From the IMG/VR virus record IMGVR_UViG_3300028840_001395, positions 124,001 through 188,000 of that record: a DNA stretch of 64,000 nucleotides; one strand, written 5' to 3'. Position numbers and translations under genes: made by a program. Under the pieces are notes generated by a model. That model had not been told where the DNA came from. It made no database searches and saw only the letters and a list, made by a program, of their open reading frames with translations. This document shows, piece by piece, positions 1 through 20,962 of this stretch. How positions within the stretch are numbered: the stretch's first letter is position 1; each line of letters starts with the position of its first letter.

Positions 1-1
1 C

Positions 2-304
2 CTACTTGGCCTGGTTCCTGATCAGGAAGGAGATGGCGACCCGGAAGCCTTCCTGCGTGACGATGCCCTTGGCGTTGACCCACTTCTTCGCCAAGGCGAA
101 CTTGGCCTGCGGGGTCTCCATGTTCGGCACCGGCTTCTGCGCCAGGGTCAGTAGGCACCAGCGCGTGAGTGCCTCGACCGCCTGGCGCTGCATGGGAACT
201 GCCGGAGCCTTCGGCTTCACCGGGGCCTTCTTCGCCGGAACGGCCTTCTTCACCGGGGCCTTGACGGGACGACGAGCAGGGCTTGCGGGCTTGCGGGCTG
301 CCAT
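2..304 (-). CDS. Small basic protein with Lys/Ala/Pro-rich (histone-like) N-terminus
   Basis: PAKKA/PVKK repeats; GGAGG RBS upstream; preceded by a class II motif. Confidence 0.6.
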   Translation of the reverse strand: MAARKPASPARRPVKAPVKKAVPAKKAPVKPKAPAVPMQRQAVEALTRWCLLTLAQKPVPNMETPQAKFALAKKWVNAKGIVTQEGFRVAISFLIRNQAK

Positions 305-329
305 CTCATACCTCCAGAGGGAGTGTTCT

Positions 330-355
330 TTGGCTACTAGGTGGGGGGTATAGAG
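330..355 (-). promoter_or_regulatory. Class II motif copy (CTCTAT-N12-GTAGCC)
   Basis: Same 12-nt spacing as copies at 56472 and 62067; sits in the intergenic gap upstream of the 2..304 gene. Confidence 0.4.
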
Positions 356-358
356 GCT

Positions 359-934
359 CTAGTGAGATGTCCCGTAGAGCTTGTGCTCCAGAATGTAGTC
401 CATCACCTTGGGCGGAACCATCTTCCGAGCATGACCCAGACCACCTGGGCCGCTCGCCAGGCTCATCCTGATGTCCGTGCTGCTGATGTCAGGGAGGACG
501 AAGGGCATCTGGGACTCCGCACCATCGGGCCGGGGCATCACGAAGAATTCGACCAACCCGGCCAAGTCCTGCCAACGATGCCAGGAGTGCATCACGCCCT
601 CATTGTCCGAGCCGATGATCAGGAACAGGTCGAAGTCCTCCTTCGGGTACTCGACCCGCATCTTCTCCATGAGATCCACCGTGTAGCGGATACGCAGGAG
701 TCGCTCCATCGAGGACACATGGACGTCCGGCATACCACTGAACGCCCGTCCACACATGAAAAGCCGATGGTCGAAGTCGATGAGGTGGGAGTCCTTGTCG
801 AAGGCGTGGTGCCAGCAGGGGTGGACGTAGATGCGGTCAAACTGGCCCATCACCTGGGCGTAGGCCAGGCCCATGACATGAGCGATGTGGGGTGGGTTGA
901 ACCCGCCGCCGAAGAACGCGATACGCTGCTTCAT
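359..934 (-). CDS. nadD: Nicotinate-nucleotide adenylyltransferase
   Basis: FFGGGFNPPHIAH (HxGH-like), IIGSDN and ISSTDIR motifs typical of NadD. Confidence 0.92.
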   Translation of the reverse strand: MKQRIAFFGGGFNPPHIAHVMGLAYAQVMGQFDRIYVHPCWHHAFDKDSHLIDFDHRLFMCGRAFSGMPDVHVSSMERLLRIRYTVDLMEKMRVEYPKEDFDLFLIIGSDNEGVMHSWHRWQDLAGLVEFFVMPRPDGAESQMPFVLPDISSTDIRMSLASGPGGLGHARKMVPPKVMDYILEHKLYGTSH

Positions 935-1152
935 GGTAACACCAACCCCCAGAAGCCAGGAGTGACCCGAGCTACGTCAGGGCAGAGGTAGGCCCGGCAG
1001 ACGGTGGGTCTCTCCTCACGAGGGAGGGTACATCCCGTGTCGCTCCAGTGGCGACAGTAGCCGTCCTTGCGGTAGGGCTTGGCGAAGCCGTAGCCAGGCT
1101 GGTAGCAGCACTCGCCGCATCCCGTGGGGCATTCCCAGTCCTGACCTTCCAT
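931..1152 (-). CDS. Small CxxxCxxCC cysteine-cluster protein (YkgJ-like)
   Basis: CPTGCGECC...CRHW...C...RPTVCRAYLC. Confidence 0.65.
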   Translation of the reverse strand: MEGQDWECPTGCGECCYQPGYGFAKPYRKDGYCRHWSDTGCTLPREERPTVCRAYLCPDVARVTPGFWGLVLP

Positions 1153-1168
1153 CGGGGCCTCCAGTCAC

Positions 1169-1200
1169 CTAGACTACTCTCGCGTGTGCCCGTGTAAGCC
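1169..1200 (-). promoter_or_regulatory. Class I bipartite phage promoter motif
   Basis: GGCTTAC-N14-GAGTAGTCTAG on the minus strand, upstream of the Cys-cluster/nadD pair. Confidence 0.75.
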
Positions 1201-1504
1201 CCTGGATGGTCGCCATCACCCTGCCGGGGATATTCTGCTCGTAGGGGCGATAGTCCCAGGCGAGCATCTTGGTGAGCCTCTCCTGGTCGAAGGTGTCCTC
1301 GGAGCCTTCCGGATTCCACTCCTGGTCGAAGATGACCAGCATGGTCTTGATGAACTTCCGCAGGTAGTGGTGAACCGAAGGATCTCCGGAGATCTTCCTG
1401 AACACGTCCATGTACTCTACGGGAATGGCGTGGAAGCCCCGCCAGGTGAACGGGAGGAACGCTTGACTACCATCGGGGAGGGTCTTCTGAATCAGATGGT
1501 GCAT
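1169..1504 (-). CDS. Hypothetical protein
   Basis: Co-oriented, fits operon spacing, GC3-biased codons. Confidence 0.6.
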   Translation of the reverse strand: MHHLIQKTLPDGSQAFLPFTWRGFHAIPVEYMDVFRKISGDPSVHHYLRKFIKTMLVIFDQEWNPEGSEDTFDQERLTKMLAWDYRPYEQNIPGRVMATIQGLTRAHARVV

Positions 1505-1517
1505 CCTCGATGCCCTT

Positions 1518-1958
1518 TCACATCAACTTCAAGTGTCCCGTGATCTCATCGATGGCCTTGGGGTGTGCCGGACCGATGGCCACACAGGTCTTGGTAGGTA
1601 CCCCGTGGAACTCCGTCGCCCCCGAATCAGTGATGACTGCCGTGGGGAATCCGAGTTTCTGGGACTCCTCCGCCAGGGCGAGAAGCTCCTCCTCGTCCTT
1701 GCAGCCCACGACGACCTTGGTGAACAGCCCCTTGATCCAGCCCTCCAACCCCGCCGTGTCCAGCATGACGATGAGACAGGCCATCTCCTTGGTCGTCCTG
1801 CCGGGATTCTGAGGGTCGGCATCGACCTCGACCATCCCGAACTCTCCCCGGTCAAGCAGCACCTTCATCGAGGCATGGGCCACCTGGGCGGCAATCTTGC
1901 CCTTCCGCATCTTGAGATCCTTGCGGACGACGATCACCTGCTTCATCTCATCGGCCAT
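1518..1958 (-). CDS. pth2: Peptidyl-tRNA hydrolase, Pth2 family
   Basis: KQVIVVRKDLKMRKGKIAAQVAHAS, TKVVV, ITDSGATE, TCVAIGP...IDEITGHLKL; start reassigned to ATG at 1958. Confidence 0.92.
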   Translation of the reverse strand: MADEMKQVIVVRKDLKMRKGKIAAQVAHASMKVLLDRGEFGMVEVDADPQNPGRTTKEMACLIVMLDTAGLEGWIKGLFTKVVVGCKDEEELLALAEESQKLGFPTAVITDSGATEFHGVPTKTCVAIGPAHPKAIDEITGHLKLM

Positions 1959-1959
1959 G

Positions 1960-2652
1960 CTACACCTCGAAGAAGATGCCGTCCTTCTGGAGTCGGCGGT
2001 ACGTGGGGCAGTCGAAGCGGTAGAGCTTCGGAGGACGCCGCCCGATGCTCTTGGTCTCCCCGGTCTCGACCAGGACACCCAGGCGGAGCACCCGGCGGCG
2101 GAAGTTCCGCTTGTCGAGCTTGCGGTCGAGGATGATCTCGTACACTCGCTGCAACTCGGTCAGGGTGAACTCCTCGGGCAACAGGTCGATGCCCAGCGGC
2201 TGCCAGCGGACCTTGGAACGAAGCCGCTCCAGGCCCACCGCCAGAATCTCGGCATGGTCGAAGGCCAGCGCACCCTGGATCTTGTCGGCGGGTGCCCAGG
2301 TGACGCCCTGGGCGTCGCTGCCAGGTTGAAGCTGCATCCCTGTCCTGACCAGCGCCAGGTAGGCGGTCGAGATGTAGTGCCCTCGGGGATCCCGCTTGGG
2401 CTTGCCGAACGTGTAGAGCTGTTCCAGGTAGGAGAGCTTGAGCCCTGTCTCCTCCTGAAGTTCCCGCTTGACCGCTGCATCGAGGTCTTCATCCGGCTCC
2501 ACATGGCCCCCAGGGAGCGCCAGGAGGCCCTTGAACGGCTCCTCTCCCCTTTGGATGAGCAAGACCTGGAGTTCCTCGAAGTCGGCGCTCACACCGAAGA
2601 CCACGGCGTCCACGGTGTTGACGGCTCGCGGGTACTCGTAGGTGTAGCTCAC
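1960..2652 (-). CDS. nrtR: NrtR-family Nudix + winged-helix regulator
   Basis: Intact Nudix box GHVEPDEDLDAAVKRELQEETGL; AFDHAEIL; C-terminal FTLTELQRVYEIILDRKLDKRNFRRRVL wHTH. Confidence 0.9.
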   Translation of the reverse strand: MSYTYEYPRAVNTVDAVVFGVSADFEELQVLLIQRGEEPFKGLLALPGGHVEPDEDLDAAVKRELQEETGLKLSYLEQLYTFGKPKRDPRGHYISTAYLALVRTGMQLQPGSDAQGVTWAPADKIQGALAFDHAEILAVGLERLRSKVRWQPLGIDLLPEEFTLTELQRVYEIILDRKLDKRNFRRRVLRLGVLVETGETKSIGRRPPKLYRFDCPTYRRLQKDGIFFEV

Positions 2653-3302
2653 GATGCCCCCCGGACAGGCACCTTGCGAATGGCACCCTCCTCGTTGCGC
2701 TCGACGGCCACGTAGACGACCTCGGTGGCGACCACGGCGACGGGAGCCGCTTCACCATCGCGGGAGAACTCCACTTCGACCTTGATGGTCAGGGAGGTGT
2801 TGCCGATCTTCACCAGCGTCGTGTAGAGCGTCACCACGTCACCGATAGACACGGGATGGTTGAACTCGATGCCGTTCATGAAGCGGGTGGCAACATCATG
2901 CTTCGTGTGCTTGCGGGCCTCCACGGCTCCTGCCAGATCGATCTCCGCGAGGATAGCTCCGCCGAATACCTCGCCCCGGTGGTTGGTGTCCTTGGGCAGC
3001 AGGATGCGCCGGATGGCCAGATTCCGCCGAGGGGGCTCCTCCTTGAGCTTCTGTGGCTCATCGTGCATCTGGCACTCGGAGACGTGGGTGAGCATGTGCC
3101 GGTATCCCTCCCGTTCGGGGTCAGGTTCGGTGAGGGTGGTGGCCCAGCACCGACAGTCCGGGTCGCCACAGTCGAGGTCGCAGTAGTCGAAGGCATCCTC
3201 GTCCTCGGGCTGGATCTCGACCCGCAGGCGGTTGGAGTTCTTGATGTAGCCGCTGCCCGGAGAGGGCCACACCCAGTCGCCCGGCTTTCGGCGCTTACTC
3301 AT
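2649..3302 (-). CDS. Hotdog-fold acyl-CoA thioesterase (YciA-like) with N-terminal Cys/His-rich extension
   Basis: PKDTNHRGEVFGGAILAEIDLAG motif and PVSIGDVV; start at MSKRRKPG. Confidence 0.8.
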   Translation of the reverse strand: MSKRRKPGDWVWPSPGSGYIKNSNRLRVEIQPEDEDAFDYCDLDCGDPDCRCWATTLTEPDPEREGYRHMLTHVSECQMHDEPQKLKEEPPRRNLAIRRILLPKDTNHRGEVFGGAILAEIDLAGAVEARKHTKHDVATRFMNGIEFNHPVSIGDVVTLYTTLVKIGNTSLTIKVEVEFSRDGEAAPVAVVATEVVYVAVERNEEGAIRKVPVRGAS

Positions 3303-3342
3303 CTTCGACCTCCAGTTCCTCAATGTACCCCTCGGGGCCACC

Positions 3343-3543
3343 CTAGTCGTCCCGGAAGGTGGCGACGAACTCGCCCTCCATCGTGACCTCGTAGCCATGC
3401 TCGTCGTGGATGGTGTCGGGGAAGATCAGCCCTGCGAACTCACCGTGGAGAACCTCGACCGCGACCTGGCGGTGACGGCTGGCCTTGATCACGTCCGAGG
3501 GTGTGTCCGGCTCGTGTCGGTATCTGGCGACGTAGATCTTCAT
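3343..3543 (-). CDS. Hypothetical protein (66 aa, MKIYVARY...)
   Basis: ATGA overlap with upstream gene; GGAG RBS. Confidence 0.5.
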   Translation of the reverse strand: MKIYVARYRHEPDTPSDVIKASRHRQVAVEVLHGEFAGLIFPDTIHDEHGYEVTMEGEFVATFRDD

Positions 3544-3776
3544 TCGGGAAGCTCCTTCTCCGACCAGATGATGAACGGCCCCTGTCCTGACCCCAAGATC
3601 ATGTAGCCGTGCTCGGGATGCTTGGCCAACCCAGTCGGCCCACTGGGGCCGTCCATCTCCATCCGGAGAATCGCGCGGCCCTCTTCGGGCATCTTGGGGA
3701 GATGCTGTCTCCACTGAGACAGCGGGATGAGGTGCTTCTCGGCCTCGAAGGCGATCTTGCTCAGGTGGTGACTCAC
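3540..3776 (-). CDS. Hypothetical protein
   Basis: Coupled overlaps on both sides. Confidence 0.55.
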   Translation of the reverse strand: MSHHLSKIAFEAEKHLIPLSQWRQHLPKMPEEGRAILRMEMDGPSGPTGLAKHPEHGYMILGSGQGPFIIWSEKELPE

Positions 3777-5518
3777 TTGCTCCCCTTCATCTTGGCCCAG
3801 TAGAGCTTGTCGCCCTGGGCGATGACGAGCTTCGACCCGCTCTTGTAGAGCCGCATGTCGCCCGAGAGCGCCGGGTCATCGATCTCCTTGACCGACGCCG
3901 AATCCTTCCGGGAGGAGCACAGCTCCAGCTTGGAATCCTCGTTGAGACAGACACACACGCCCGAAGCGAGCACCACGAAGTTGAGACCCCCGTGCTGGAT
4001 GTCCTCGACCAGGCGCACGTCGTAGCTGTAGTCACGGGGGTCGAAGCGGAACACCAGCCGGTCATACTGGCCCTTCTTCTCCCCGATGACCATCAGCACT
4101 CCACCGCTGTCCTCATCGGTGCTGTCGAACTTGGCGTCGAGGACGCGGTAGTCGTCCAACTCCTTCATCCGCACCTGGTAGGACTGATCCCCCCGCAGGA
4201 TGGAGACGTGAACGGCCCCGAGGAGTTTCTGGACGACCACACCGGGGTAGAGCCGGGCCGCGTGCTCCAACGTCTGGGCGACCTTGTTGGAGGAGGCGAT
4301 GATATCTGGCCCGGCCTCGTTGAGCACGATGCGATACACGGCGTCCCGAGTCCGCATGTAGAGGTTGCCCCCACCCGACGACACCTCCAGGGCTTCCAGG
4401 TTGAATCCGAGGTACTTGCGATCCTTCACGCTATAGAGCTTGAGCGTCCCGCCCGAGTGGTCAGCCAGCACGGGCCATGCACACCAGGTAAAGCCCAGGC
4501 CAGAGAGCTTTTTCGGGGCGTCTCCACACCGCTTGCCCGGATGGCCCAGGTTGTACCAGATGCCCTGGTCGGTGACAGCGACCAGGGCAGAGGTCGAGTG
4601 CTGGAAGCTGTCCATGCTCCAGAAGCCTCGGACGGTGCCCTTGTGTCCCAGGTCGTCCAGTTCGACCATCTCGATGATGTCCGACCCGGCCACGGCCTTG
4701 ACCTTCGGGACGATGACGGCCACGACTCCGAACTCGCCCGGAGGAGGCAGGCGCTTGCCCTGCTTGAACAGCGCCTCGTACCACTGCCGGTAGGCGGAGG
4801 GGATGACGCTGAAGTCGTAGGCCACCGCAGGCACCTTGACGTTCGGGTCGAACACCGAGATGCCCCGCTGCATCCGGGTCTCCAATCCCTTCGCCGTGGG
4901 GTGCTTGCCCTTGTAGGGGTGGATGCCGGTGAACATCTGGAAGCTGACGATGGCGAAGCTGAACCAGTCGGACAGTTCCGAGAAGTCTGCGGGCTCGACC
5001 GACCAGTCCCGGATCGAGGGCATGATCGCAGAGGCGGGGAAGCTCCGCGTCTGGTAGCTGGCGGCGTCGATGCCGTAGACATCATCGAACTTCTTGCCGA
5101 CGAGGAAGTTCATCTCATTGCCGTCCACCAGGAGCACGTCGGCCTTGTGGACATTGGATACCAGGTCTTGTAGCTTGCGAACAAGCTCCCGCATCCTGTC
5201 GTGGGTCAGGCCCTCTCGCTCTCGGAAGACACGGGGGAACAACTGGCACAACGCCCAGGCGTCCCTGATGAAGCGCATGGTGTAGCCGATGGGCTTCTTC
5301 TTGGTGTCGGTCAGGAGTCCCAACGGGCGAATCACCCGGTCATCCTTGATGGCTGACAGTTCGTGGATCTTGCCCAGCGGGGGCATCGTCTTGGGGTCGT
5401 GGTAGACCTTGAATGACCGCTGGCCACGGGCGTACACGACGCCTTCGCCGCCCTCTCCGACGTAGTTCGCCTGCGTCAGCGTGACCGGCTTGGACTCGCC
5501 CTTGACGTAGACCTTCAT
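3773..5518 (-). CDS. Ser/Thr-type protein kinase (TerY-P triad kinase, YegI-like) with beta-rich C-terminal domain
   Basis: GEGGEGVVY P-loop, FKVYH lysine, DGNEMNFLV catalytic loop, IDAASYQ, SDWFSFAI, GIHPY. Confidence 0.85.
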   Translation of the reverse strand: MKVYVKGESKPVTLTQANYVGEGGEGVVYARGQRSFKVYHDPKTMPPLGKIHELSAIKDDRVIRPLGLLTDTKKKPIGYTMRFIRDAWALCQLFPRVFREREGLTHDRMRELVRKLQDLVSNVHKADVLLVDGNEMNFLVGKKFDDVYGIDAASYQTRSFPASAIMPSIRDWSVEPADFSELSDWFSFAIVSFQMFTGIHPYKGKHPTAKGLETRMQRGISVFDPNVKVPAVAYDFSVIPSAYRQWYEALFKQGKRLPPPGEFGVVAVIVPKVKAVAGSDIIEMVELDDLGHKGTVRGFWSMDSFQHSTSALVAVTDQGIWYNLGHPGKRCGDAPKKLSGLGFTWCAWPVLADHSGGTLKLYSVKDRKYLGFNLEALEVSSGGGNLYMRTRDAVYRIVLNEAGPDIIASSNKVAQTLEHAARLYPGVVVQKLLGAVHVSILRGDQSYQVRMKELDDYRVLDAKFDSTDEDSGGVLMVIGEKKGQYDRLVFRFDPRDYSYDVRLVEDIQHGGLNFVVLASGVCVCLNEDSKLELCSSRKDSASVKEIDDPALSGDMRLYKSGSKLVIAQGDKLYWAKMKGSK

Positions 5519-5772
5519 TTCACCACCCACAGCCAGCCGACGATGCGGCTTTTCTGGTCACCCCTCATGGAATGGAACAGCACGAAGGGATCACCTTTCC
5601 ATCCTTTGCATTTGGGAGGAAGGTCACGTTCGTAGTGGTATCTTTCCACCACGAACCCACAACAGGACTGCGGCTCGGACTCCACCACGAGGATGCACTG
5701 GTTGGGCTGTCCCTCTGGAAGCTCCTCGATGGGGTGAAGGAGAGCCTTGAAGTCGGGATGGAGGGTCTTCAT
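5515..5772 (-). CDS. Hypothetical protein
   Basis: Coupled overlaps, co-oriented. Confidence 0.55.
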   Translation of the reverse strand: MKTLHPDFKALLHPIEELPEGQPNQCILVVESEPQSCCGFVVERYHYERDLPPKCKGWKGDPFVLFHSMRGDQKSRIVGWLWVVK

Positions 5773-6098
5773 CCTGGTGCTCCCGGTGCGAACATCCCCA
5801 TGCCGTAGGTGCCGAAGAACATCTGGGCAAGCTCGCTCTCACGCTTCTCGTCCCGCTTGCCGTCGTTGAGGGCCTCCACGATGAGGCGGATGGCGAGGAG
5901 GAACCGAGGCTGGACCGGCATCTCGTCCGGGATGGCGCTCATGCAGTCCTTGACGGCAGCCACGGCCCAGACGAACTTGCCCGTCCACACCATGTCCTCA
6001 TCCATCGAGCCGTCATCCCAGGCGGAGTCCCAGACGATGCGGAAGCCACCGATGCGCTCGCCTCGCAGTTTGACCTCGATGATGCGTGTGTCAGCCAT
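5769..6098 (-). CDS. Hypothetical protein
   Basis: Coupled, co-oriented. Confidence 0.6.
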   Translation of the reverse strand: MADTRIIEVKLRGERIGGFRIVWDSAWDDGSMDEDMVWTGKFVWAVAAVKDCMSAIPDEMPVQPRFLLAIRLIVEALNDGKRDEKRESELAQMFFGTYGMGMFAPGAPG

Positions 6099-6365
6099 CT
6101 AGCTCCCCCAGTACTCGGCACGGAGCATCTTCTCCGTGAGTGCGTATCCCTTGTTGCACCTCGTCCCGACCAGGTACACCCCATCTTCCAGGGTCCAGCC
6201 GGGCGCACCGAAGTTCGGATGCCGCTGGGCGTGTTCGTGGCCGGAGCAGACGATGATCTTGCCCGATTCGTGGACGAGCAGGCAGTAGTCCTTGAGAAGC
6301 AGGTAGGCCAGGTGCTCCTGATCTTCCAGGGCTGCCTCTGCGATCTCGTCGGCCAGCGTACTCAC
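6099..6365 (-). CDS. Hypothetical protein
   Basis: GTGA overlap with the PP2C gene. Confidence 0.6.
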   Translation of the reverse strand: MSTLADEIAEAALEDQEHLAYLLLKDYCLLVHESGKIIVCSGHEHAQRHPNFGAPGWTLEDGVYLVGTRCNKGYALTEKMLRAEYWGS

Positions 6366-7267
6366 GCATCCCCCAGGTAGATCGCACCGACGCCCAGGTC
6401 ATCGTAGTGCTGCCAGTGGTTCTTCACGCAGAAGCGGGTCAGGAAGCTCTTGCACCTCCGGGCCATAAACTCCCCCGTAAAGCTCTTGATGTCCGTCAAA
6501 TGACCCAGAACCCAGGCCATCGGGATGCGCTCCATCGTCTCGGCGTCCTGGAAGCTCTGAACGCCATCGGAGAACACCGCCACCAGGTCGTACAGCTTGG
6601 GGTCGAAGGTCATGACGAAGGGGAAGTTGTCGTAGGTGACCGTCTGACCCGGTTCACCCTCGATAATCACGGGCCAGTCCCAGTGGTTGTCCGGCTCGGC
6701 CCCCTCCCGCAGCTTCTCCAGGGAATCCCACCGACGCAAGATGCGACCCTCATGCGTCCCACTCGCCTCCATCGTCGCCTCGATGGCCTCCTTGTAGACC
6801 AGGAGCCGGTCCGGGTTGAGCAGGTAGGACAGATAGCTCGGGGCGTTCTGGCAGTCGATCTCGACCACCTCGACCTGTCCCGTCTCCCGCTGCCGGGCAG
6901 CTATCACCCCATCCCCGCAGGTGATGACCTGCACGGAGCCGTCATCCTGCTGGTAGGCCGTCAAGAGGGTGGCGTCAAGACTTTGACGCTTGAGGCTCTG
7001 GGGCAGCTTGTCCAGGGCGTGCCAGATGAGCCAGTCCACCTTCTCGGGCAGCCGGTCACCCAGAATCTCGATCCCCGTGACAGCGGCCATCGTCAGGAGC
7101 CGGGAGCCGAAGTCCGTGTCCGGCGAGCCGGAGCAGCCGTCCGAGACGATGGCGAAGGTGCGGGCACCCTCGTCCACCCCGAACCGGGCCGGGGTCCGAC
7201 CAGAGCGGGCGTAGTCCTGGCAGACCGCGTGAGCCTTGCCCCGAGTGAAGAAGGCATCCGAGTGCAT
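6362..7267 (-). CDS. PP2C-family protein phosphatase (TerY-P triad, YegK-like)
   Basis: AIVSDGCSG, CGDG, AVFSDGV, DDLGVGAI metal-binding motifs. Confidence 0.88.
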   Translation of the reverse strand: MHSDAFFTRGKAHAVCQDYARSGRTPARFGVDEGARTFAIVSDGCSGSPDTDFGSRLLTMAAVTGIEILGDRLPEKVDWLIWHALDKLPQSLKRQSLDATLLTAYQQDDGSVQVITCGDGVIAARQRETGQVEVVEIDCQNAPSYLSYLLNPDRLLVYKEAIEATMEASGTHEGRILRRWDSLEKLREGAEPDNHWDWPVIIEGEPGQTVTYDNFPFVMTFDPKLYDLVAVFSDGVQSFQDAETMERIPMAWVLGHLTDIKSFTGEFMARRCKSFLTRFCVKNHWQHYDDLGVGAIYLGDA

Positions 7268-7279
7268 CGTAGGCCCCCG

Positions 7280-8020
7280 TCAGAAGGTCAACGACTGCGA
7301 CGGCCCGCCCGTGCCGAGCGCCTGGCTCTGAGACGAGAAGGACTTGGAGATGAAACCGCCCAGCTTGGCCAGCTCCTTCTCGGTCGCGTTGGCGATGGCC
7401 ACGTACTGCTGGAACCCCGCCTCGTCCCGGAAGTCCTCCAGGTAGGAGTTGAGGCCCGTGCTGGCGTCCGTGTTCACGCCGATGAGGACCGGCATGATGG
7501 ACTCCAGGGCCTCCTTGCGGCGGGCCTCGGCCAGGGCGTCCTTGACCATCTTGCGGCTGCACTTGCCCTTGTTGTGCTCCCCGTCCGTGATGACGAACAC
7601 GCAGGCGTTGCAGTCGAAGTCGTTGTCCACGAGGGTCTGGCCGTACTGCATGGCCGAGTGGACGGCCTGGTAGGTCGCGTCGTGCAGCGCCGTCAGCCCA
7701 CCCTCGGGCAGGCAGTCGTCGTAGTCGGCCTCGTTGCAGTCCGCCAGCGGCTTGAAGCCGTGGAACTCCTGCACCTTGTCATCGAAGAAGGTCACGCGGA
7801 GCATCATGTTGTCCGCACGGGGAGACCGGCGGCAGGCCTTGACGACCTCCTTGAGCGCGGCCTCGATCTCCTTGCGGAAACCCCAGACCGAGCCGGACAC
7901 GTCCACGACGATCTCGCCCAGCGTGTACTCGGTCGCGCCGAGTTCCTCGATGCGGGTGCCGGAGAACTTGAAGTTGGTGCCACCGATCTGGTGGGTCTCC
8001 ATGTCAGCGAGCTTGGGCAT
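7280..8020 (-). CDS. vWA-domain protein (TerY-like)
   Basis: MIDAS DVSGS, GGLTALHDA, FVITDG; directly upstream of PP2C and kinase. Confidence 0.85.
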   Translation of the reverse strand: MPKLADMETHQIGGTNFKFSGTRIEELGATEYTLGEIVVDVSGSVWGFRKEIEAALKEVVKACRRSPRADNMMLRVTFFDDKVQEFHGFKPLADCNEADYDDCLPEGGLTALHDATYQAVHSAMQYGQTLVDNDFDCNACVFVITDGEHNKGKCSRKMVKDALAEARRKEALESIMPVLIGVNTDASTGLNSYLEDFRDEAGFQQYVAIANATEKELAKLGGFISKSFSSQSQALGTGGPSQSLTF

Positions 8021-8032
8021 CTTGCCCTCCCT

Positions 8033-8887
8033 TCAGGCCAGGAAGTTGACGGTGGTGTCGGTCTTCATCCCCTTGGCGGTCATCTCCTTCACGAAGTCGT
8101 CGCCCAGGGACTCGAAGCCGCCGACGCTGCTGCTGGCGTCCGTGAGCAGGCACAGCTTCTCGACGTACTTGGGGTCGGAGAAGCAGTCCGCGATGTCCCG
8201 CGCCGTGTTGGCCATGCAGTGCGAGAGCGCCTCGCCCGTCATGCCGATGATGTCGGCCTCCTCCAGCGTCTGGATGAGCTTGGTGTTGACCTGCGACTCG
8301 GGGTCGTTCGGGTCGGGCACCTCGGCCTTGACGCCGGAGAAGTGCTCCGTCCAGGGGTTGCTGCCCTTGGTCACGTAGTCGGTCTGGGCGAAGTTGCGCT
8401 CCTCCCAGCCCTGGAGCGCCTGGAACACGACGGGCACGATGTTGTGGCCCCAGGAGCCGATGAGGCAGTGCGGGGGCCAGATGCAGTGCGGGTAGCGCCC
8501 ACCCGCCGTCAGGGCCTTGAGGTAGTCCCGCGAGCGGTCGAGGAAGCTCGGCAGGTGGGTGGTGAACTCCTGGTCGGTCGGGGCCATGTTGTTCGTCGGG
8601 TCGAGGGCAACGATCTTGTCACCGTCCATCCCGAGCAGCGTGAAGGGCGCGGGCGGGTTGCCCGCCGAGTCCTTCCACCACTTCGGGTGGGAGATGTCGA
8701 TCAGCCGGTGGCTGTCGAGGGTGACGTGGATGTCATCGAACTTGTCGCCCACGCGGTCGATCATCGCCGCGAGTCGCGTCATGTCCTCGTCCGCGCCGGG
8801 CACCACGAGTGCCCCCTGGTTGCCGTGTCCGTCGTCCGCGATGCAGAAGTCGTTCTGCGGGTCGATGATCAAGAGCTGGATGTTCAT
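8033..8887 (-). CDS. pncA: Nicotinamidase (isochorismatase/cysteine hydrolase family)
   Basis: LLIIDPQNDF, TLDSH...HP..W, WPPHC...WG, KG, GEALSHC catalytic Cys. Confidence 0.88.
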   Translation of the reverse strand: MNIQLLIIDPQNDFCIADDGHGNQGALVVPGADEDMTRLAAMIDRVGDKFDDIHVTLDSHRLIDISHPKWWKDSAGNPPAPFTLLGMDGDKIVALDPTNNMAPTDQEFTTHLPSFLDRSRDYLKALTAGGRYPHCIWPPHCLIGSWGHNIVPVVFQALQGWEERNFAQTDYVTKGSNPWTEHFSGVKAEVPDPNDPESQVNTKLIQTLEEADIIGMTGEALSHCMANTARDIADCFSDPKYVEKLCLLTDASSSVGGFESLGDDFVKEMTAKGMKTDTTVNFLA

Positions 8888-8923
8888 GGTCTCCTCCTCA
8901 CCCCTCCGTTGGGGCGCTTGGTT

Positions 8924-10000
8924 TCACTCGGGCACCTGGGGAAGCTCATCGGTCAGGAAGCCCGCCTTGACCAGTTCCGCTCGCGTCCCCAGCATCGGGA
9001 TGTTCGGGTTCGCCTTGTGTCTCGTCTGCGCCTCGGCCCGGCGGGCAGCCTTGAGGAAGTCCAGCACGAACGCCTTGGGCACCGGCTGCCAGAGGGCGCT
9101 CTTCACCGCGAAGCCTTCGAGGGACTTCCAATCCGGCTCCGTGAAATCGAACAGCACCTTGTCCACCTGGACGAGGCTGCTGTAGCGCACATCGTAGTAG
9201 GGGATCTCCACATCGAGGAACCGGCTCACCCGCTCGATGGTGCCGATACGCATGATGTCGCCCGTGTCCGGGTTGATGCGCCCGTAGGTGAAGGGCATCC
9301 CGAGCCAGTCGAGAAGCTCCTTCTCGTCCGAGTGCCCATCCCCGGTCCCCCACAGGTCGGGCGACGGGGTGGCCTCGATGATGGGCCGGACGACATCGTA
9401 GATGCCCAGCTTGTTGCCCAGGTAGAAGGCAAGCTGGTACACCTCGGTCTTGCTCAGCATGGCGAGCGGATTGGTGTCCACCTCGCCGTCGCCGCCCTTC
9501 TGGTAGAAGCGCAGCCAGCGATCCTCGCACTCGTTGCCGGTCCCGTGCCGGATGCCCCCGCCCATGATGCGGTTGTAGGCACGACCGATGGGTGCCCGCA
9601 GGGTCGAGCGGATGCTTCCGAGGATGGTCGGGTCGGCATCCATGCGTTCCTTGATCTCGGTGCCGATGTCGGTGCCGAAGTGGGCGTCCACGAGCGACGT
9701 GATCACCTCGTCACGGACGTTGTTGAAGATGTCGTTGAAGTGTCCGATGGCCAGAGGCACCTGGAGAGCCTCGCACAGCTCCCGCGCACGGTCGGTCTGC
9801 TGGAAGCTCGTGTGGATGATGGTGTGGTCGAAGATGCAGTTCTCCGGCCCCAGCGCCTTCACGAGCAACATCGTCATCACGGCGGAGTCGATGCCCCCGG
9901 AGATGTCGAGCTGCGCCTTCGGAACCCCGAACTCGTCGTGATACTCACGGATGGACTGCATCCGGTCACGAGCGAGTCCCTTGGCATCAATGACAGGCAT
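8924..10000 (-). CDS. nadE: NH3-dependent NAD+ synthetase (single domain, no glutaminase)
   Basis: ISGGIDSAV ATP-PPase loop, GTGNECED, YQKGGDG, PLAMLSKTEVYQLA, PSPDLW; ATG at 10000 overlaps the pncB stop (TGATG). Confidence 0.9.
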   Translation of the reverse strand: MPVIDAKGLARDRMQSIREYHDEFGVPKAQLDISGGIDSAVMTMLLVKALGPENCIFDHTIIHTSFQQTDRARELCEALQVPLAIGHFNDIFNNVRDEVITSLVDAHFGTDIGTEIKERMDADPTILGSIRSTLRAPIGRAYNRIMGGGIRHGTGNECEDRWLRFYQKGGDGEVDTNPLAMLSKTEVYQLAFYLGNKLGIYDVVRPIIEATPSPDLWGTGDGHSDEKELLDWLGMPFTYGRINPDTGDIMRIGTIERVSRFLDVEIPYYDVRYSSLVQVDKVLFDFTEPDWKSLEGFAVKSALWQPVPKAFVLDFLKAARRAEAQTRHKANPNIPMLGTRAELVKAGFLTDELPQVPE

Positions 10001-11466
10001 CACATACCTCCCCGGACACGCGCCCACTGCTCCTTGATCATGGCCTTCAGCGCCCTCGTGTGTTCCGACACCTCGGGCTTCACGGTGTCCGTGTGGGTCA
10101 GCCGGTGGAAGCCCTTCGGCTCGGACTCCCACTCCTGGCCGACGACGCTGCGCTTGCCATCCTCACTGCGGAAGATCACGGGCTTGCCGGGCAAGGACAT
10201 CTTGCCCTCGACGGCGAACTTCATCACGTCGCGCTCGCCCGTCCGGCACAGCTTGTAGACCGCCGACACGGCGTTCCGGGTGAACTTGTGCGGGGAGGGG
10301 TCGCAGACGAGGAAGCCGCCAGAGCCGTAGCCCGACTGCTCGGGAGTGATGCCCAGCGACTCGCAGAGCACCTCCTGCGCTCGCGCCTTGAGGACGTTGA
10401 TTCCGTCCATGAACATGTAGAAGGGATTGACGTGTTCCTCGGCCTCGGCCTGGACGTACTCGCGGAGCTGAGCCTCCTGGTCGCCCGAGTCGAAGCGGAC
10501 ACCGTGCTGGATGTCCGGGCGTTCCTTCATCGCCTGGACGGCGGCGGGGATGCCGACCTCCATCGCGTCGAAGGTGTCGAACAGGTAGGAGGGCCGCTGC
10601 GGGCGCATGTCCCGGATGGCCCGGAAGGCGTCCAGGTCGTTGCCCCACCGCTGCTGATGCTCGTGGCCCGTGGTGCCGACCGGCACCATCCCCATCTGCT
10701 TCGCGCCCCAGACGTTCGATGTCCGGGTGATGCCCGCCTCCTTGCAGGCGGACAGGGCGATCTCGTGCATCTGGAGGCAGGTCGCGCCTCGCATCCCGAC
10801 CTCGAAGATGCGGTCGCCGCCGACGATGTTGACCAGCCCCTTGGCGTTGTGGAGCACCTTCATGAAGTAGTCGTCCTGCTGGACGGTGATGTCCCGGTCA
10901 TCCTCGCGCTCGATGGCCTCGCAGGTGAGCCGGACGATCTCGGCCTCATCCTCGCAGGTGCAGCGGAACTCACGGGTGTCGTTGGTCAGCACCTCGGTTG
11001 CGATCTGGATGGGGAAGTGCAGGGCGATGGCCAGCGGCTCCAGCCACGACACCAGGAACGAGGGGCCGGTGATGGTGGCGATGGGTTCCCGTGCCATGAC
11101 CCAGGTGCCAGGAGGCGCACAGGTGACCTCGATGTCCTGCTTGAGCGCGACCTCCATCGACTGCGACATGCCGTAGCCGAACATCCGGAGGTAGTCGTTC
11201 TCACCGGGCCAGATCTCGTCCGGCAGCAGCTCGCGGATGAGCAGGTTGAGGTCGAAGGGGATGTAGTGGGTGCCACGTCGGAAGGACAGGTAGAACGTCT
11301 CGCGCCGGAGGGGGAAGCCCGCCTGGGCCATCGAGAACTTGTAGCCGTCCGACATCAGCACGGACGGATCCTTGCCGTTGAGCATCCGCCCGGCGACATC
11401 GAACTCGATGCACTGGTCGGTTCCGACCCTCGCCAGTCTGCTCTGTCTCTTTGCTCTCTCGTTCAC
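10000..11466 (-). CDS. pncB: Nicotinate phosphoribosyltransferase
   Basis: DGYKFSM, EVGMRG, TSNV, GTTGHE, DTFD, GVRFDSGD, VYKL, K..LPGK; adjacent pncA/nadE favour a nicotinate (not nicotinamide) PRTase. Confidence 0.85.
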   Translation of the reverse strand: MNERAKRQSRLARVGTDQCIEFDVAGRMLNGKDPSVLMSDGYKFSMAQAGFPLRRETFYLSFRRGTHYIPFDLNLLIRELLPDEIWPGENDYLRMFGYGMSQSMEVALKQDIEVTCAPPGTWVMAREPIATITGPSFLVSWLEPLAIALHFPIQIATEVLTNDTREFRCTCEDEAEIVRLTCEAIEREDDRDITVQQDDYFMKVLHNAKGLVNIVGGDRIFEVGMRGATCLQMHEIALSACKEAGITRTSNVWGAKQMGMVPVGTTGHEHQQRWGNDLDAFRAIRDMRPQRPSYLFDTFDAMEVGIPAAVQAMKERPDIQHGVRFDSGDQEAQLREYVQAEAEEHVNPFYMFMDGINVLKARAQEVLCESLGITPEQSGYGSGGFLVCDPSPHKFTRNAVSAVYKLCRTGERDVMKFAVEGKMSLPGKPVIFRSEDGKRSVVGQEWESEPKGFHRLTHTDTVKPEVSEHTRALKAMIKEQWARVRGGM

Positions 11467-11468
11467 CT

Positions 11469-11511
11469 TTAGTGTCCCTCCGACACCTTTATAGTGTCAC
11501 CCGCACACTTT
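11469..11511. promoter_or_regulatory. Two tandem NrtR-box-like palindromes
   Basis: ttaGTGTC-cctcc-GACACctt (11469-11489) and ataGTGTC-acccg-CACACttt (11491-11511); each has a GT-N7-AC core; centres 22 bp apart. Confidence 0.7.
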
Positions 11512-11516
11512 GTCAA
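11488..11516 (-). promoter_or_regulatory. Host sigma70-type promoter of the pncB operon
   Basis: TTGACA-N17-TATAAA on the minus strand. Confidence 0.8.
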
Positions 11517-11534
11517 GCACTTTCTTCGTGCCAC

Positions 11535-11566
11535 CTAGACTACTCTCGCGGGAACACAGATAAGCC
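11535..11566 (-). promoter_or_regulatory. Class I bipartite phage promoter motif
   Basis: GGCTTAT-N14-GAGTAGTCTAG. Confidence 0.75.
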
Positions 11567-12172
11567 TGAAATTCCCGGCTCCCCTCCCATCCTCGGAGGG
11601 TCAGGCAATCCGTTGTGTTTCCAGATGAGTCGCATCAGTCGATCCTCGGCGTCCGCGACAACGGCCCAGGTCATGGCCACCGAGGACACCCCCTCTTTCT
11701 GGACGACTGCGGTGAGGAGCTTCCGGGCGTTCTCCTTCGCGTGACCCTGGAACAGGTTCCACAGGCTGCCATGCTCTCGTCCGGCGTCCATGAGGCGGTT
11801 GTATCGTTCGTGGCCTCGCAGGTAGCCGATGACGTGGACCAGGAGGTAGCGCCGGGGGTTGTCGCTGGGACGCTCGACACCAAGCTCCTTGTAGAGCCAG
11901 GTGAAGTAGAACGAGTGCTGTATCGACACCGTGGCCAGGCCGAGAGGCACCCTCTCGCTGATGAGCCTGTATTGCTCATCGTGAACGTCGCTGATCTGGA
12001 GGCACTGCAACATGAACTCGGGGTACACGCCCCTGATGTTGTTCAGCACCTCCTTCATGTAGATGCACGCTTCGCCCTGACGCTTGAGGTAGGCGTCCAT
12101 GTCGAGATTCTGTGCCCACTCGGGCGGGGACTTGGCGGGGATGTTGAAGTCGAGGTCTTTCATCAGAGGCAT
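11540..12172 (-). CDS. Hypothetical protein (210 aa)
   Basis: Co-oriented, overlaps the end of the CoaB-like gene. Confidence 0.65.
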   Translation of the reverse strand: MPLMKDLDFNIPAKSPPEWAQNLDMDAYLKRQGEACIYMKEVLNNIRGVYPEFMLQCLQISDVHDEQYRLISERVPLGLATVSIQHSFYFTWLYKELGVERPSDNPRRYLLVHVIGYLRGHERYNRLMDAGREHGSLWNLFQGHAKENARKLLTAVVQKEGVSSVAMTWAVVADAEDRLMRLIWKHNGLPDPPRMGGEPGISGLSVFPRE

Positions 12173-13287
12173 TGGATGAACCCATGTCCTTCGATGTTGA
12201 AAACGGGGCCGGGGATGATCCGGTTGTTGTCGCGGACGGTGCCCGGCGGAGCGTGCGGCACAGTCGGCACGTCGGGAAGCTGCTCGTGCAGGTGGAGGAC
12301 GGCCTTGGACTCGTGGGTTTCTCCGACCGCGATGAGCAGCGGGGCGTTGAGCGTGGCCTTGGTGTTGCCCTCAACCAAGATGGTCGAGCCGTGTGTGGCA
12401 CACCCCTCCCACCCCTTCACCAGCACAGCATCCTTGCTGGTGAATCCCACACCCTTCTCCCGAGGGCTGCACAGCCATCCGAACCCCGGCAGCTTGACGG
12501 CGAGGGAACCGAACACTCGATGTTCTCCTTCGATGGGCTTGATGAAGCGGTCGAGGTTCTCCTCCACAATGCGGTCGAACAGGCGGAACCGATCCGGGAA
12601 GTTCTTCTGCGCCTGCTCCATGAGGATGTAGCCCCCGCTCAGTTCCGTCCGGTAGTGCTCGTCCTCGATGACCGCCAGGAGGTCGGCGTAGAAGGCGTTC
12701 CAGTCGTCCTCGTGGGTCACGACCGTCCTGTCCTTGTGGACGAGGTACTTGGTCTTGAGGCCACGGCCCATGTCGTTGGCGATCACCAGGTTGCAGCGAG
12801 CGTTGAGCAGGACGTGGTACGCCGCCTCGATCAGCGCCTCGTGATCCGCGTTGACCAGCATCTTGCAGCCGATGAGGGTCAGCTTCGGGTTGTTGACCTT
12901 CATGTCCTCGATGACCCGAGGGGCGAGGATGAAGGGCACCCGAATGATGTCTCCGGGCTTGTACCCGGCGGTGGGCATCTTGCCCTCGTAGGGTTCGGCG
13001 GGAATCCAGTTGACCACGGCTGCGGCCATGATGGCGGCGTCGTGGGTCTTGGCGAGTTCCAGGGCCTTCATGTGGTACTGCATGAAGCCCTTGTGCCGGA
13101 CGACCTTGATACCCACAGAGGGCTGGTGCTGGAACGTGTCCGCCACCAGGAGCGTGACCTGGTGGCCTCGCCGGACGAGGTAGTGACCGAACTTCACGGC
13201 CCAGATACCCCGGATTCTGTTGCTCACGAGCTTGTTGGCGTCTAGCGACCCGTAGACGGGGCCAGCAGTGATGAGGATCTTCTTCAC
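12163..13287 (-). CDS. CoaB/Dfp-like phosphopantothenate-cysteine-ligase-family domain fused to a class II aldolase-like domain
   Basis: KKILITAGP...SN...G, MAAAV, LIGCK, VIAND (CoaB pattern); C-terminal GSLAVK...VLHLHE...GHG; GTG start overlaps the MTase stop. Confidence 0.65.
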   Translation of the reverse strand: MKKILITAGPVYGSLDANKLVSNRIRGIWAVKFGHYLVRRGHQVTLLVADTFQHQPSVGIKVVRHKGFMQYHMKALELAKTHDAAIMAAAVVNWIPAEPYEGKMPTAGYKPGDIIRVPFILAPRVIEDMKVNNPKLTLIGCKMLVNADHEALIEAAYHVLLNARCNLVIANDMGRGLKTKYLVHKDRTVVTHEDDWNAFYADLLAVIEDEHYRTELSGGYILMEQAQKNFPDRFRLFDRIVEENLDRFIKPIEGEHRVFGSLAVKLPGFGWLCSPREKGVGFTSKDAVLVKGWEGCATHGSTILVEGNTKATLNAPLLIAVGETHESKAVLHLHEQLPDVPTVPHAPPGTVRDNNRIIPGPVFNIEGHGFIQCL

Positions 13288-13946: not shown

Positions 13947-14140
13947 TCGATGACCTCCAGGGCTGCTCGGACGCGCTCGACACGCTCCGGGTTGGAACCC
14001 CCGTCATAGGCGGCAGCGACCAGGGCGGCAGCCCCTCGCAGGAGAACGCGGAAGCCTTCTCCCAGGACTCGATCACCGACCTTGGCGTGGGCCATGATCT
14101 CGCGGACGACTAGGTTGAGGGTCTGACGGGGTTGAGCCAT
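13940..14140 (-). CDS. Hypothetical protein
   Basis: GGAG RBS, co-oriented. Confidence 0.5.
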   Translation of the reverse strand: MAQPRQTLNLVVREIMAHAKVGDRVLGEGFRVLLRGAAALVAAAYDGGSNPERVERVRAALEVIDC

Positions 14141-14196
14141 CTGTCTATCTCCTTCCCCTGCCCGAAGTCGGGCGGGGAGGTCAGCACCAAGTCATG

Positions 14197-18763: not shown

Positions 18764-18789
18764 GGCTTGTTCCTCCTTCTCCTCTTCCC

Positions 18790-20943: not shown

Positions 20944-20962
20944 CGTCGTCTCCCTCTCGGTT

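What the first reader, a model, noticed from the sequence alone, without database searches (positions are those of the whole stretch)
3773..8020. TerY-P-like triad (vWA-PP2C-kinase) nested inside the NAD+ operon of a phage
Seen: vWA (intact MIDAS), PP2C and kinase follow pncA in the same direction with short gaps; three small orphan ORFs sit between PP2C and kinase. Established: TerY-P triads are known as bacterial stress/antiphage phosphorylation switches. Inference: the phage may have co-opted a defence-type kinase/phosphatase switch, co-regulated with NAD+ salvage, for superinfection exclusion, host phospho-rewiring, or control of the NAD enzymes. The inserted small ORFs are candidate substrates or modulators.
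Basis: partly seen in the sequence, partly recalled or inferred. Interest (0 to 1): 0.75.

Follow-up and report, generated by a model that had tools for sequence, protein, structure and literature searches.

The report
Phage nicotinamidase–vWA–phosphatase–kinase cassette
A huge phage carries a four-gene cassette, shared by many uncultured huge phages, in which the first enzyme of nicotinamide-to-NAD+ recycling sits next to a vWA protein, a PP2C phosphatase and a Ser/Thr kinase, which suggests but does not prove that phosphorylation controls phage NAD+ salvage.

Summary
On the minus strand of a 435.8-kb virus genome, one tightly packed gene row reads NAPRTase, NadE, PncA, vWA (intact MIDAS), PP2C, three small ORFs, and a Ser/Thr kinase. 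NrtR and NMNAT lie further downstream.

Corrections:
- The kinase starts at 5518 and carries a C-terminal beta-propeller.
- The first small ORF is 88 aa (6099-6365), not the 103-aa frame.

The main reinterpretation is that the conserved unit has four genes, PncA-vWA-PP2C-kinase.
- Across 89 loci, PP2C is present in 87, vWA in 83 and PncA in 79. The canonical order holds in 62 of 78 non-redundant layouts.
- PncA-vWA is the tightest pair. PncA stays with the cassette even where NAPRTase and NadE sit about 180 kb away.
- The four families co-diverge.

The module is therefore old and phage-borne. It shares the TerY-P architecture, but I found no sign of TerY-P membership: no PADLOC TerY match, a propeller instead of a zinc ribbon or OB fold, and no ter or restriction context.

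The small ORFs occur only in the closest relatives, so they are not conserved substrates.

The mechanism is inferred only: a phospho-switch acting through vWA on nicotinamide salvage. Three cultured Variovorax strains carry the same genes on 0.8-Mb replicons and offer a test system.

The parts
11488..11516 (-). Sigma70-like promoter TTGACA-17 nt-TATAAA in the 73-bp gap upstream of NAPRTase
   Evidence: Read. It is the only match in the 64-kb window, with 0 expected by chance. The consensus scanner missed it because the second hexamer ends in A.
10000..11466 (-). Nicotinate phosphoribosyltransferase (PncB-like, divergent)
   Evidence: Pfam NAPRTase E 5.3e-5; NCBIfam TIGR01513 E 2.9e-25.
8924..10000 (-). 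NAD+ synthase NadE. The likely start is the ATG at 10000, overlapping the NAPRTase stop by 1 nt. The open frame extends to 10132.
   Evidence: Pfam NAD_synthase E 1.2e-17; start candidates.
8033..8887 (-). Nicotinamidase PncA (284 aa) with a phage-specific insert of about 60 aa; first gene of the conserved cassette
   Evidence: Profile A3 matches only nicotinamidases. The catalytic D-K-C triad and the D-x-H...H metal site are invariant. Present in 79 of 89 loci.
7280..8020 (-). Standalone vWA protein (246 aa) with an intact MIDAS and a conserved Ser-rich last helix and tail
   Evidence: Alignment A4; model pLDDT 88.7; vWA fold; 562 cluster representatives at E<=1e-30.
6362..7267 (-). PP2C-family phosphatase (301 aa)
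   Evidence: Pfam PP2C_2. D18, D43-G44, D119, D234-G235 and D289-D290 are invariant. Present in 87 of 89 loci.
6099..6365 (-). Small ORF, 88 aa. Its GTG start overlaps the PP2C stop (GTGA). Lineage-specific.
   Evidence: Sequence read; GC3 0.83; homologues only in L114, L115 and L116; no Pfam match.
5769..6098 (-). Small ORF, 109 aa, lineage-specific
   Evidence: GC3 0.85; homologues only in L114, L115 and L116; no informative Atlas match.
5515..5772 (-). Small ORF, 85 aa, with ATGA overlaps at both ends; lineage-specific
   Evidence: GC3 0.71; homologue only in L116.
3773..5518 (-). Hanks-type Ser/Thr kinase (residues 1-262) fused to a C-terminal beta-propeller (275-580)
   Evidence: At least 995 homologues; invariant catalytic residues; model pLDDT 89.4; Foldseek matches to LRRK2 kinase-WD40 and to beta-propellers.
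3540..3776 (-). Small ORF, 78 aa. Its GTG start overlaps the kinase stop.
   Evidence: GC3 0.82; homologues only in L114-L116; junction read.
3343..3543 (-). Small ORF, about 66 aa. The likely start is the ATG at 3543.
   Evidence: Start candidates; homologues in L114 and L115.
2649..3398 (-). Hotdog-fold (4HBT) thioesterase. The true start is probably near 3302. Homologues in relatives are fused to a Macro domain.
   Evidence: Pfam 4HBT E 4.3e-11; Macro+4HBT fusion in L006; N-terminus read.
1960..2652 (-). NrtR-type regulator (NUDIX domain plus winged helix)
   Evidence: Pfam NrtR_WHD E 2.2e-26 and NUDIX E 1.2e-21.
359..934 (-). Nucleotidyltransferase of the NMNAT/NadD type (CTP_transf_like)
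   Evidence: Pfam E 2.4e-11; found in the same neighbourhood in relatives.

Best explanation
The region is one copy of an old, vertically inherited four-gene cassette of huge phages:
- the nicotinamidase PncA;
- a standalone vWA protein with a MIDAS site;
- a PP2C phosphatase;
- a Hanks-type Ser/Thr kinase with a C-terminal beta-propeller.

In this phage the cassette sits in a single operon-like row with the remaining enzymes of the deamidated (Preiss-Handler) route from nicotinamide to NAD+: NAPRTase and NadE upstream, NMNAT and the ADP-ribose-sensing regulator NrtR downstream.

Shown here: the gene content, intact catalytic and metal-binding residues in all four proteins, the conserved order, co-divergence, and the tight PncA-vWA pairing.

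Inferred: the kinase and the PP2C form a reversible phosphorylation switch. The beta-propeller would act as its input or substrate-docking domain and the vWA protein as its adaptor or target. The switch would gate or assemble the nicotinamidase step, so that the phage tunes recycling of nicotinamide into NAD+ during infection. One such situation is when host NADase defences release nicotinamide and ADP-ribose.
For: - Co-occurrence: among 89 kinase-bearing loci, PP2C is present in 87, vWA in 83 and PncA in 79.
- Order and spacing: the canonical order is kept in 62 of 78 non-redundant layouts. The median PncA-vWA gap is 49 bp, and the pair is adjacent in 44 of 62.
- PncA follows the cassette: five near-complete genomes (CheckV 92-100%) whose cassette has no NAD gene within 10 kb still encode NadE (5 of 5) and NAPRTase (4 of 5) elsewhere.
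- Co-divergence: pairwise distance matrices of the four families correlate with r 0.50-0.77, and no permutation of 500 reached the observed value.
- Intact enzymes: catalytic residues are invariant in PncA, vWA, PP2C and the kinase.
- NAD/ADP-ribose neighbours recur: NAPRTase, NadE, NMNAT, NrtR, ADP-ribosyl glycohydrolase and Macro.
- Operon features in the window: one strong promoter-like site, overlapping stop and start codons, and no minus-strand terminator-like site within the gene row other than one inside the last gene, NMNAT.
- The same gene set, with pncB next to the kinase, lies on Variovorax 0.8-Mb replicons.
Against: - No experiment or transcript data exist; no RNA run was listed.
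- The PncA+vWA co-fold gave no answer, with a score of 0.00. This counts neither for nor against binding.
- NAPRTase and NadE lie within 10 kb in only about 40% of loci.
- The Ser-rich vWA helix and tail are kept in the Variovorax WDL1 copy, whose record has no detectable kinase or PP2C. The tail therefore need not be a phospho-acceptor.
- Correlated distances are expected for any genes that share a genome history. They do not show a functional link.
Confidence: 0.45

Rival explanations
1. Host-takeover kinase. The kinase phosphorylates host proteins early in infection, as T7 gp0.7 does (own knowledge). PP2C and vWA limit or direct it. Adjacency to PncA would reflect only shared early expression.
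For: - The row lies in a region with RIIA, RIIB and an ArdC-like anti-restriction gene on the same strand.
- The kinase is predicted to be active, and its beta-propeller could dock many substrates.
- The PP2C-kinase pair moves as a block relative to the PncA-vWA pair in a few loci: L037, L076, L088 and L070.
Against: - Shared timing alone does not explain why PncA-vWA-PP2C-kinase order is kept down to about 30% kinase identity while other neighbours change.
- The cassette keeps PncA when the other NAD genes are distant.
Confidence: 0.25
2. Phage-borne defence or superinfection-exclusion system of the TerY-P kind. The triad would sense a competing phage and trigger exclusion.
For: - The domain trio is the same as in TerY-P, which is reported as a stand-alone defence system (PMC10542128).
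- Kinase family members weakly match defence-kinase models: mad6 in 26 of 28, plus PD-T4-6 and MkoA.
- The gaps between the cassette genes accumulate variable small ORFs, as conflict loci often do.
Against: - No vWA member matches a TerY model, and only 4 of 24 PP2C members weakly match a PADLOC PP2C model.
- No effector gene is conserved with the trio. The only constant partner is a metabolic enzyme, PncA.
- The kinase lacks the zinc ribbon or OB fold.
- The family sits on huge-phage contigs and huge-phage-like replicons, not on bacterial defence islands.
Confidence: 0.12
3. The vWA protein is a maturation or metal-loading adaptor for the PncA metalloenzyme. This would resemble the vWA partners of MoxR systems such as NorD with NorQ (own knowledge). 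The kinase and PP2C would be a later regulatory addition.
For: - PncA-vWA is the tightest pair.
- The pair persists in Variovorax WDL1 without a detectable kinase or PP2C.
- PncA keeps a metal site.
- The NorD vWA domain is among the structural matches.
Against: - No MoxR-type ATPase is conserved next to the pair.
- The co-fold gave no answer.
Confidence: 0.15

Closest known systems
TerY-P triad (TerY-like vWA, PP2C, Ser/Thr kinase), as described in PMC10542128 citing Anantharaman et al. 2012 and Gao et al. 2020
   Same: It has the same three domains, encoded as neighbouring genes on one strand. The MIDAS site, phosphatase and kinase are all predicted to be active. A phosphorylation switch is the natural reading.
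   Different: - No PADLOC TerY match.
- The kinase C-terminus is a beta-propeller, not a zinc ribbon or OB fold.
- The constant fourth gene is a nicotinamidase.
- The context is NAD+ salvage on huge phages, not ter genes, restriction systems or CoCoNuTs.
Kinase (zinc ribbon) + PP2C + standalone vWA linked to GAP1-N2 GTPase systems in actinobacteria (PMC7159879)
   Same: The same trio of an active kinase, a PP2C and a standalone vWA in adjacent genes.
   Different: The partner there is a GTPase conflict system in bacteria. Here the partner is PncA on phage genomes, and the kinase C-terminal domain is different.
NAD-jumbo phages and the phage NAD+ reconstitution pathways NARP1, NARP2 and NARP3 (PMC11662467; bioRxiv 10.1101/2024.02.11.579819; PMC13464706)
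   Same: The phage encodes a full route to rebuild NAD+. The Preiss-Handler route has already been reported in jumbo phages.
   Different: - NARP1-3 use Adps/Namat, Nampt/Nmnat, or PnuC/NadR, none of which includes PncA.
- A term search found no kinase or phosphatase in the main text of PMC11662467, and no vWA in PMC13464706.
vWA proteins proposed as Mg2+-dependent peptide-binding chaperones in ARG/NrtR-centred ADP-ribose systems (PMC9503650)
   Same: A standalone vWA sits beside NUDIX/NrtR, Macro and ADP-ribosyl glycohydrolase genes.
   Different: Those are bacterial systems proposed to counter viral ADP-ribosylation. No PncA, PP2C or kinase is described with them.
Kinase plus WD40/beta-propeller architecture (LRRK2; cyanobacterial Pkinase-WD40 proteins)
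   Same: The two-domain layout is the same by fold.
   Different: The resemblance is in fold and layout only. Identity is 10-13% and no shared context is known.

Membership tests
TerY-P triad / Gao TerY-P defence system | A vWA protein with a MIDAS site, a PP2C phosphatase and a Ser/Thr kinase encoded together | tested here: met
   the gene order is kept in 62 of 78 layouts.
TerY-P triad / Gao TerY-P defence system | Sequence membership in the curated defence models (PADLOC-DB v2) | tested here: not met
   None of 24 vWA members matches a TerY model. Four of 24 PP2C members weakly match PDLC02222 (best E 1.6e-3). The kinase matches only generic defence-kinase models.
TerY-P triad / Gao TerY-P defence system | Kinase fused at its C-terminus to a zinc ribbon or OB fold (PMC10542128) | tested here: not met
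   The C-terminal 300 residues model as an all-beta propeller, with block pLDDT mostly 85-96. Foldseek matches WD40-type propellers.
TerY-P triad / Gao TerY-P defence system | Association with ter genes or with restriction/DNA-processing systems; anti-phage activity | tested here: not met
   The neighbours are NAD and ADP-ribose genes. Anti-phage activity cannot be tested with these tools.
Nicotinamidase (PncA, isochorismatase superfamily) | Catalytic Asp-Lys-Cys triad plus the D-x-H...H metal site | tested here: met
   D9, K174, C224, D58, H60 and H140 are invariant in 24 sequences. The profile matches only nicotinamidases in the PDB.
Hanks-type (eukaryote-like) Ser/Thr protein kinase | Gly-rich loop, VAIK Lys, catalytic Asp and Asn, DFG-position Asp, and the kinase fold | tested here: met
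   G23/G24, K37, D132, N137 and D151 are invariant. PF00069 is precomputed for many homologues. The fold matches protein kinases.
PP2C phosphatase | Conserved metal-binding Asp motifs and a Pfam match above the cut-off | tested here: met
   PP2C_2 scores 32.3 bits against a cut-off of 24. The Asp residues are invariant.
Phage NAD+ reconstitution pathways (NARP1, NARP2, NARP3) | The defining enzyme pairs: Adps+Namat, Nampt+Nmnat, or PnuC+NadR | tested here: not met
   The window encodes PncA, NAPRTase, NMNAT-like and NadE instead. Pathway definitions come from PMC13464706. Counter-defence activity cannot be tested with these tools.

The most novel reading that the evidence does not exclude
The cassette is a signal-gated NAD+ reconstitution system. 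The kinase-propeller, PP2C and vWA switch would sense NADase-type immunity or the stage of infection, and would switch on nicotinamide deamidation through PncA. That step would drive a phage-encoded Preiss-Handler route. This would be a fourth, regulated kind of phage NAD+ counter-defence.
Probability: 0.2. Interest if true: 0.85.

Novelty: new variant of a known kind. Interest (0 to 1): 0.6.

Why it matters
NAD+ depletion is a major bacterial defence, and the known phage countermeasures are unregulated enzyme pairs. Here a nicotinamidase is locked to a kinase, a phosphatase and a vWA protein. The vWA family alone has 562 representatives (one per 50%-identity cluster) at E<=1e-30, so the cassette is widespread.

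If the inferred link is real, huge phages would control NAD+ salvage by protein phosphorylation. The result also corrects the reading of this locus from a borrowed defence triad to an old phage module of four genes.

The cassette also occurs on 0.8-Mb replicons of three cultured Variovorax strains. This makes the question testable at the bench without first culturing a huge phage.

Tried and rejected
- Close DNA search against GenBank phages: no match.
- PHROGs: nothing informative for the kinase, the PP2C or the small ORFs.
- 103-aa ORF at 6091-6402: I first searched this frame. It is the wrong one (GC3 0.44), and I replaced it with the 88-aa frame.
- Co-fold of PncA with vWA: no answer, score 0.00. 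I do not use it as evidence either way.
- RNA data: none was listed.
- Scan of GTDB representative genomes: it found only MAG contigs. I first read this as absence from isolates. tblastn later found the cassette on replicons of cultured Variovorax strains, so I withdrew that reading.
- Anantharaman et al. 2012: the paper is not held. I took the TerY-P definition from PMC10542128 instead.
- Palindromes at the promoter: not significant on their own.
- Atlas and Pfam searches of the small ORFs: no function found.
- Fold searches of the vWA model: they confirmed the fold but named no TerY relative.


Full report
**What the window is**

The window is bases 124001-188000 of a single 435.8-kb contig that the tools class as a virus record. 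It has 63% G+C. RIIA and RIIB homologues lie at 17738-20943 and an ArdC-like gene at 21350-22594. DNA runs from sediment and seawater metagenomes hold the sequence. It is an uncultured huge phage.

**Checking the observation**

A co-directional gene row runs along the minus strand:

| Gene | Coordinates |
|---|---|
| NAPRTase | 10000-11466 |
| NadE | 8924-10000 |
| PncA | 8033-8887 |
| vWA | 7280-8020 |
| PP2C | 6362-7267 |
| three small ORFs | 5515-6365 |
| kinase | 3773-5518 |
| two more small ORFs | 3343-3776 |
| 4HBT thioesterase | 2649-3398 |
| NrtR | 1960-2652 |
| PTH2 | 1518-2078 |
| NMNAT-type nucleotidyltransferase | 359-934 |

- Alone, the 284-aa protein matches Isochorismatase and PncA models only weakly. 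A profile of 24 family members matches only nicotinamidases among solved structures (yeast Pnc1, E 1.3e-14). The D-K-C triad and the metal site are invariant.
- The vWA MIDAS residues (D40, S42, S44, T110, D146) are conserved.
- The PP2C Asp motifs are invariant.
- The kinase glycine loop, K37, D132, N137 and D151 are invariant.

Two details needed correcting. The kinase starts at the ATG at 5518, in line with the 581-aa database protein P0001. The first small ORF is the 88-aa frame 6099-6365 with GC3 0.83, not the 103-aa ORF with GC3 0.44.

**Operon features**

- The 73-bp gap upstream of NAPRTase holds TTGACA, 17 nt, then TATAAA at 11488-11516. It is the only such site in 64 kb, with none expected by chance.
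- From there to the kinase, genes are separated by 12-36 bp or overlap by 1-4 nt (TGATG, GTGA, ATGA). Purine-rich ribosome-binding sites precede PncA and vWA.
- The only minus-strand terminator-like site in 1-14500 is at 549-565, inside the NMNAT gene; none lies upstream of it in the row.
- Co-transcription is therefore likely from the sequence. It is not shown, because no RNA run was listed.

**The conserved unit has four genes**

The kinase has at least 995 homologues. The best 120 are full length at 45-88% identity, and many sit on contigs of 200-620 kb. I collected 89 loci with up to 10-kb flanks on each side (some contigs end sooner) and searched their six-frame ORFs with jackhmmer.

| Gene near the kinase | Loci (of 89) |
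|---|---|
| PP2C | 87 |
| vWA | 83 |
| PncA | 79 |
| NAPRTase | 36 |
| NadE | 33 |
| NrtR | 32 |
| NMNAT | 25 |

- Most of the loci that lack a cassette gene are truncated.
- In 62 of 78 non-redundant layouts the order is PncA, vWA, PP2C, kinase on one strand.
- Median gaps are 49 bp for PncA-vWA (adjacent in 44 of 62), 485 bp for vWA-PP2C and 368 bp for PP2C-kinase.
- In compact loci such as L068 the four genes are contiguous.
- The NAD genes move around. They lie upstream as here, between PP2C and kinase (L039, L040, L086), or downstream (L063, L080).
- Five near-complete genomes (CheckV 92-100%) whose cassette has no NAD gene within 10 kb still encode NadE (5 of 5) and NAPRTase (4 of 5) elsewhere. 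In one of them the distance is about 180 kb.
- PncA therefore travels with the vWA-PP2C-kinase genes, not with PncB and NadE.
- A few loci have PP2C-kinase followed by PncA-vWA (L037, L076, L088, L070). This suggests two sub-pairs.
- Distance matrices of the four families correlate with r 0.50-0.77, and 0 of 500 permutations reached the observed value. Mean identities are 50% (PncA), 45% (vWA), 36% (kinase) and 30% (PP2C).
- This fits long co-inheritance. It does not prove a functional link.
- Each of the four genes is single-copy in this genome.

**The small ORFs**

The 88-, 109- and 85-aa ORFs are real by codon bias. They have homologues only in the closest relatives: L114 and L115 (kinase 88% identical) and L116 (73%). 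Other loci carry different genes or none in these slots, for example a NUDIX gene, a DNA methyltransferase, or the NAD genes themselves. These slots are insertion hotspots. The small ORFs are not conserved substrates or modulators of the switch.

**The proteins**

- Kinase. The model (pLDDT 89.4) has a kinase domain at 1-262, a short disordered linker, and an all-beta domain at 275-580.
  - Foldseek matches LRRK2 (kinase plus WD40) and beta-propellers such as DDB1 BPB, Nup133 and Lis1.
  - AlphaFold DB and the ESM Atlas hold two-domain proteins of the same length, mostly viral.
- vWA. The model (pLDDT 88.7) is a classical vWA fold.
  - Its most conserved stretch is a Ser-rich motif with S225, S227, S229 and S232 invariant. 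It lies in the last helix (214-234).
  - A flexible tail follows and ends in a conserved Phe.
  - In integrin I domains the equivalent helix moves when the MIDAS binds a ligand (own knowledge). That makes it a plausible site of control.
  - The motif is kept in a Variovorax copy whose record has no detectable kinase or PP2C. It therefore need not be a phospho-acceptor.
- PncA + vWA co-fold. It gave no answer and is not used as evidence.

**Relation to TerY-P**

The published description is a TerY-like vWA, a PP2C and a Ser/Thr kinase fused to a zinc ribbon, or to an OB fold in the stand-alone defence systems. These triads are linked to ter genes or to restriction systems (PMC10542128).

- The domain trio is met here.
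- No vWA member matches a PADLOC TerY model, and only 4 of 24 PP2C members weakly match a PP2C model.
- The kinase matches only generic defence kinases.
- The kinase C-terminus is a propeller, and the context is NAD+ metabolism.
- I therefore describe the cassette as TerY-P-like in architecture but do not file it as a member.
- A similar kinase-PP2C-vWA trio is also reported with GAP1-N2 GTPase systems (PMC7159879).

**Where it occurs**

- In GenBank phages only three uncultured huge phages carry it: LR745208, LR756511 and LR756500.
- In species-representative genomes the pattern scan found 24 loci, all on MAG contigs from many phyla. These are probably mis-binned phage DNA.
- Three cultured Variovorax strains (SRS16, PBL-E5, PBL-H6) carry the set on replicons of about 0.8 Mb annotated as plasmids.
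  - The genes lie on one strand. PncA-like and vWA come first, then about 17 kb containing IS elements, then PP2C.
  - After PP2C come a full-length kinase-propeller homologue (28% identity, E 4e-53) and an annotated pncB.
  - The same record encodes an RIIA homologue.
- Strain WDL1 keeps PncA-vWA, but I found no kinase or PP2C on that record.

**Literature**

- Jumbo phages with complete salvage or Preiss-Handler routes have been reported. Term searches found no kinase or phosphatase in the main text of that paper (PMC11662467).
- NARP1 and NARP2 (bioRxiv 10.1101/2024.02.11.579819) and NARP3, which is PnuC plus NadR (PMC13464706), do not use PncA.
- The 2020 huge-phage survey does not mention these genes in its main text.
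- No paper in the searched library joins nicotinamidase, vWA, kinase and phage.
- Many subscription-journal papers are not in the library, so this is absence in what was searched, not proof of novelty.

**Mechanism**

Shown:
- A complete set of enzymes for nicotinamide to nicotinate to NaMN to NaAD to NAD+, together with an NrtR-type regulator.
- A kinase, a PP2C and a vWA protein that all look active and are locked to PncA.

Inferred:
- The kinase and PP2C set the phosphorylation state of a cassette protein or of PncA.
- The propeller supplies the input or docks the substrate.
- The vWA MIDAS binds a partner.
- The outcome is control of the nicotinamidase step, and so of NAD+ rebuilding. This would be useful when host NADases release nicotinamide.

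I give this reading 0.45. The rivals are a host-takeover kinase (0.25), vWA as a PncA maturation adaptor (0.15) and a phage-borne defence system (0.12).

**Verdict**

- The feature is a new variant of a known kind, with no experimental support yet.
- A cultured Variovorax system is available to test it.

Noticed in passing
L118 (NZ_LR594667.1, 610000-648000) and L117 (NZ_LR594690.1): Replicons of about 0.8 Mb, annotated as plasmids, in cultured Variovorax strains carry the cassette genes, pncB, NUDIX, Macro, NADAR and NAD kinase genes, and an RIIA homologue. They look related to huge phages. Strain WDL1 has PncA-vWA but no detectable kinase or PP2C on that record.
   Followed up: partly
window 17738-22594 (-): RIIB (17738-19315), RIIA (18790-20943) and an ArdC-N plus zincin metallopeptidase anti-restriction-type gene (21350-22594) lie on the same strand, upstream of the NAD row.
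   Followed up: partly
window 11472-11516 (-): Half-site palindromes (GACAC-N7-GTGTC-N5-GACAC) overlap and follow the -10 element of the promoter-like site. They could be an operator, for example for the NrtR encoded in the same row. The pattern counts are not significant on their own.
   Followed up: partly
window 12163-13946 (-): A DFP/CoaBC-like gene (phosphopantothenoylcysteine synthetase/decarboxylase family) and a SAM-dependent methyltransferase lie just upstream of the NAD row. This hints at wider cofactor metabolism in this phage.
   Followed up: no
window 1518-2078 (-): A PTH2-type peptidyl-tRNA hydrolase sits between NrtR and NMNAT. The same placement recurs in the close relatives L114 and L116, and a peptidyl-tRNA hydrolase lies next to the NAD kinase in Variovorax.
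   Followed up: no
L114:9120-10061 and L006:11326-12279: Close relatives carry an ADP-ribosyl glycohydrolase shortly downstream of the kinase (directly after it in L114), and L006 has a Macro-4HBT fusion. The window lacks the glycohydrolase and keeps only the 4HBT part.
   Followed up: no
window 61047-62048 (-): A 333-aa protein with weak AAA_25 and nSTAND3 NTPase matches. Most other large ORFs tested in the window have no family match.
   Followed up: no
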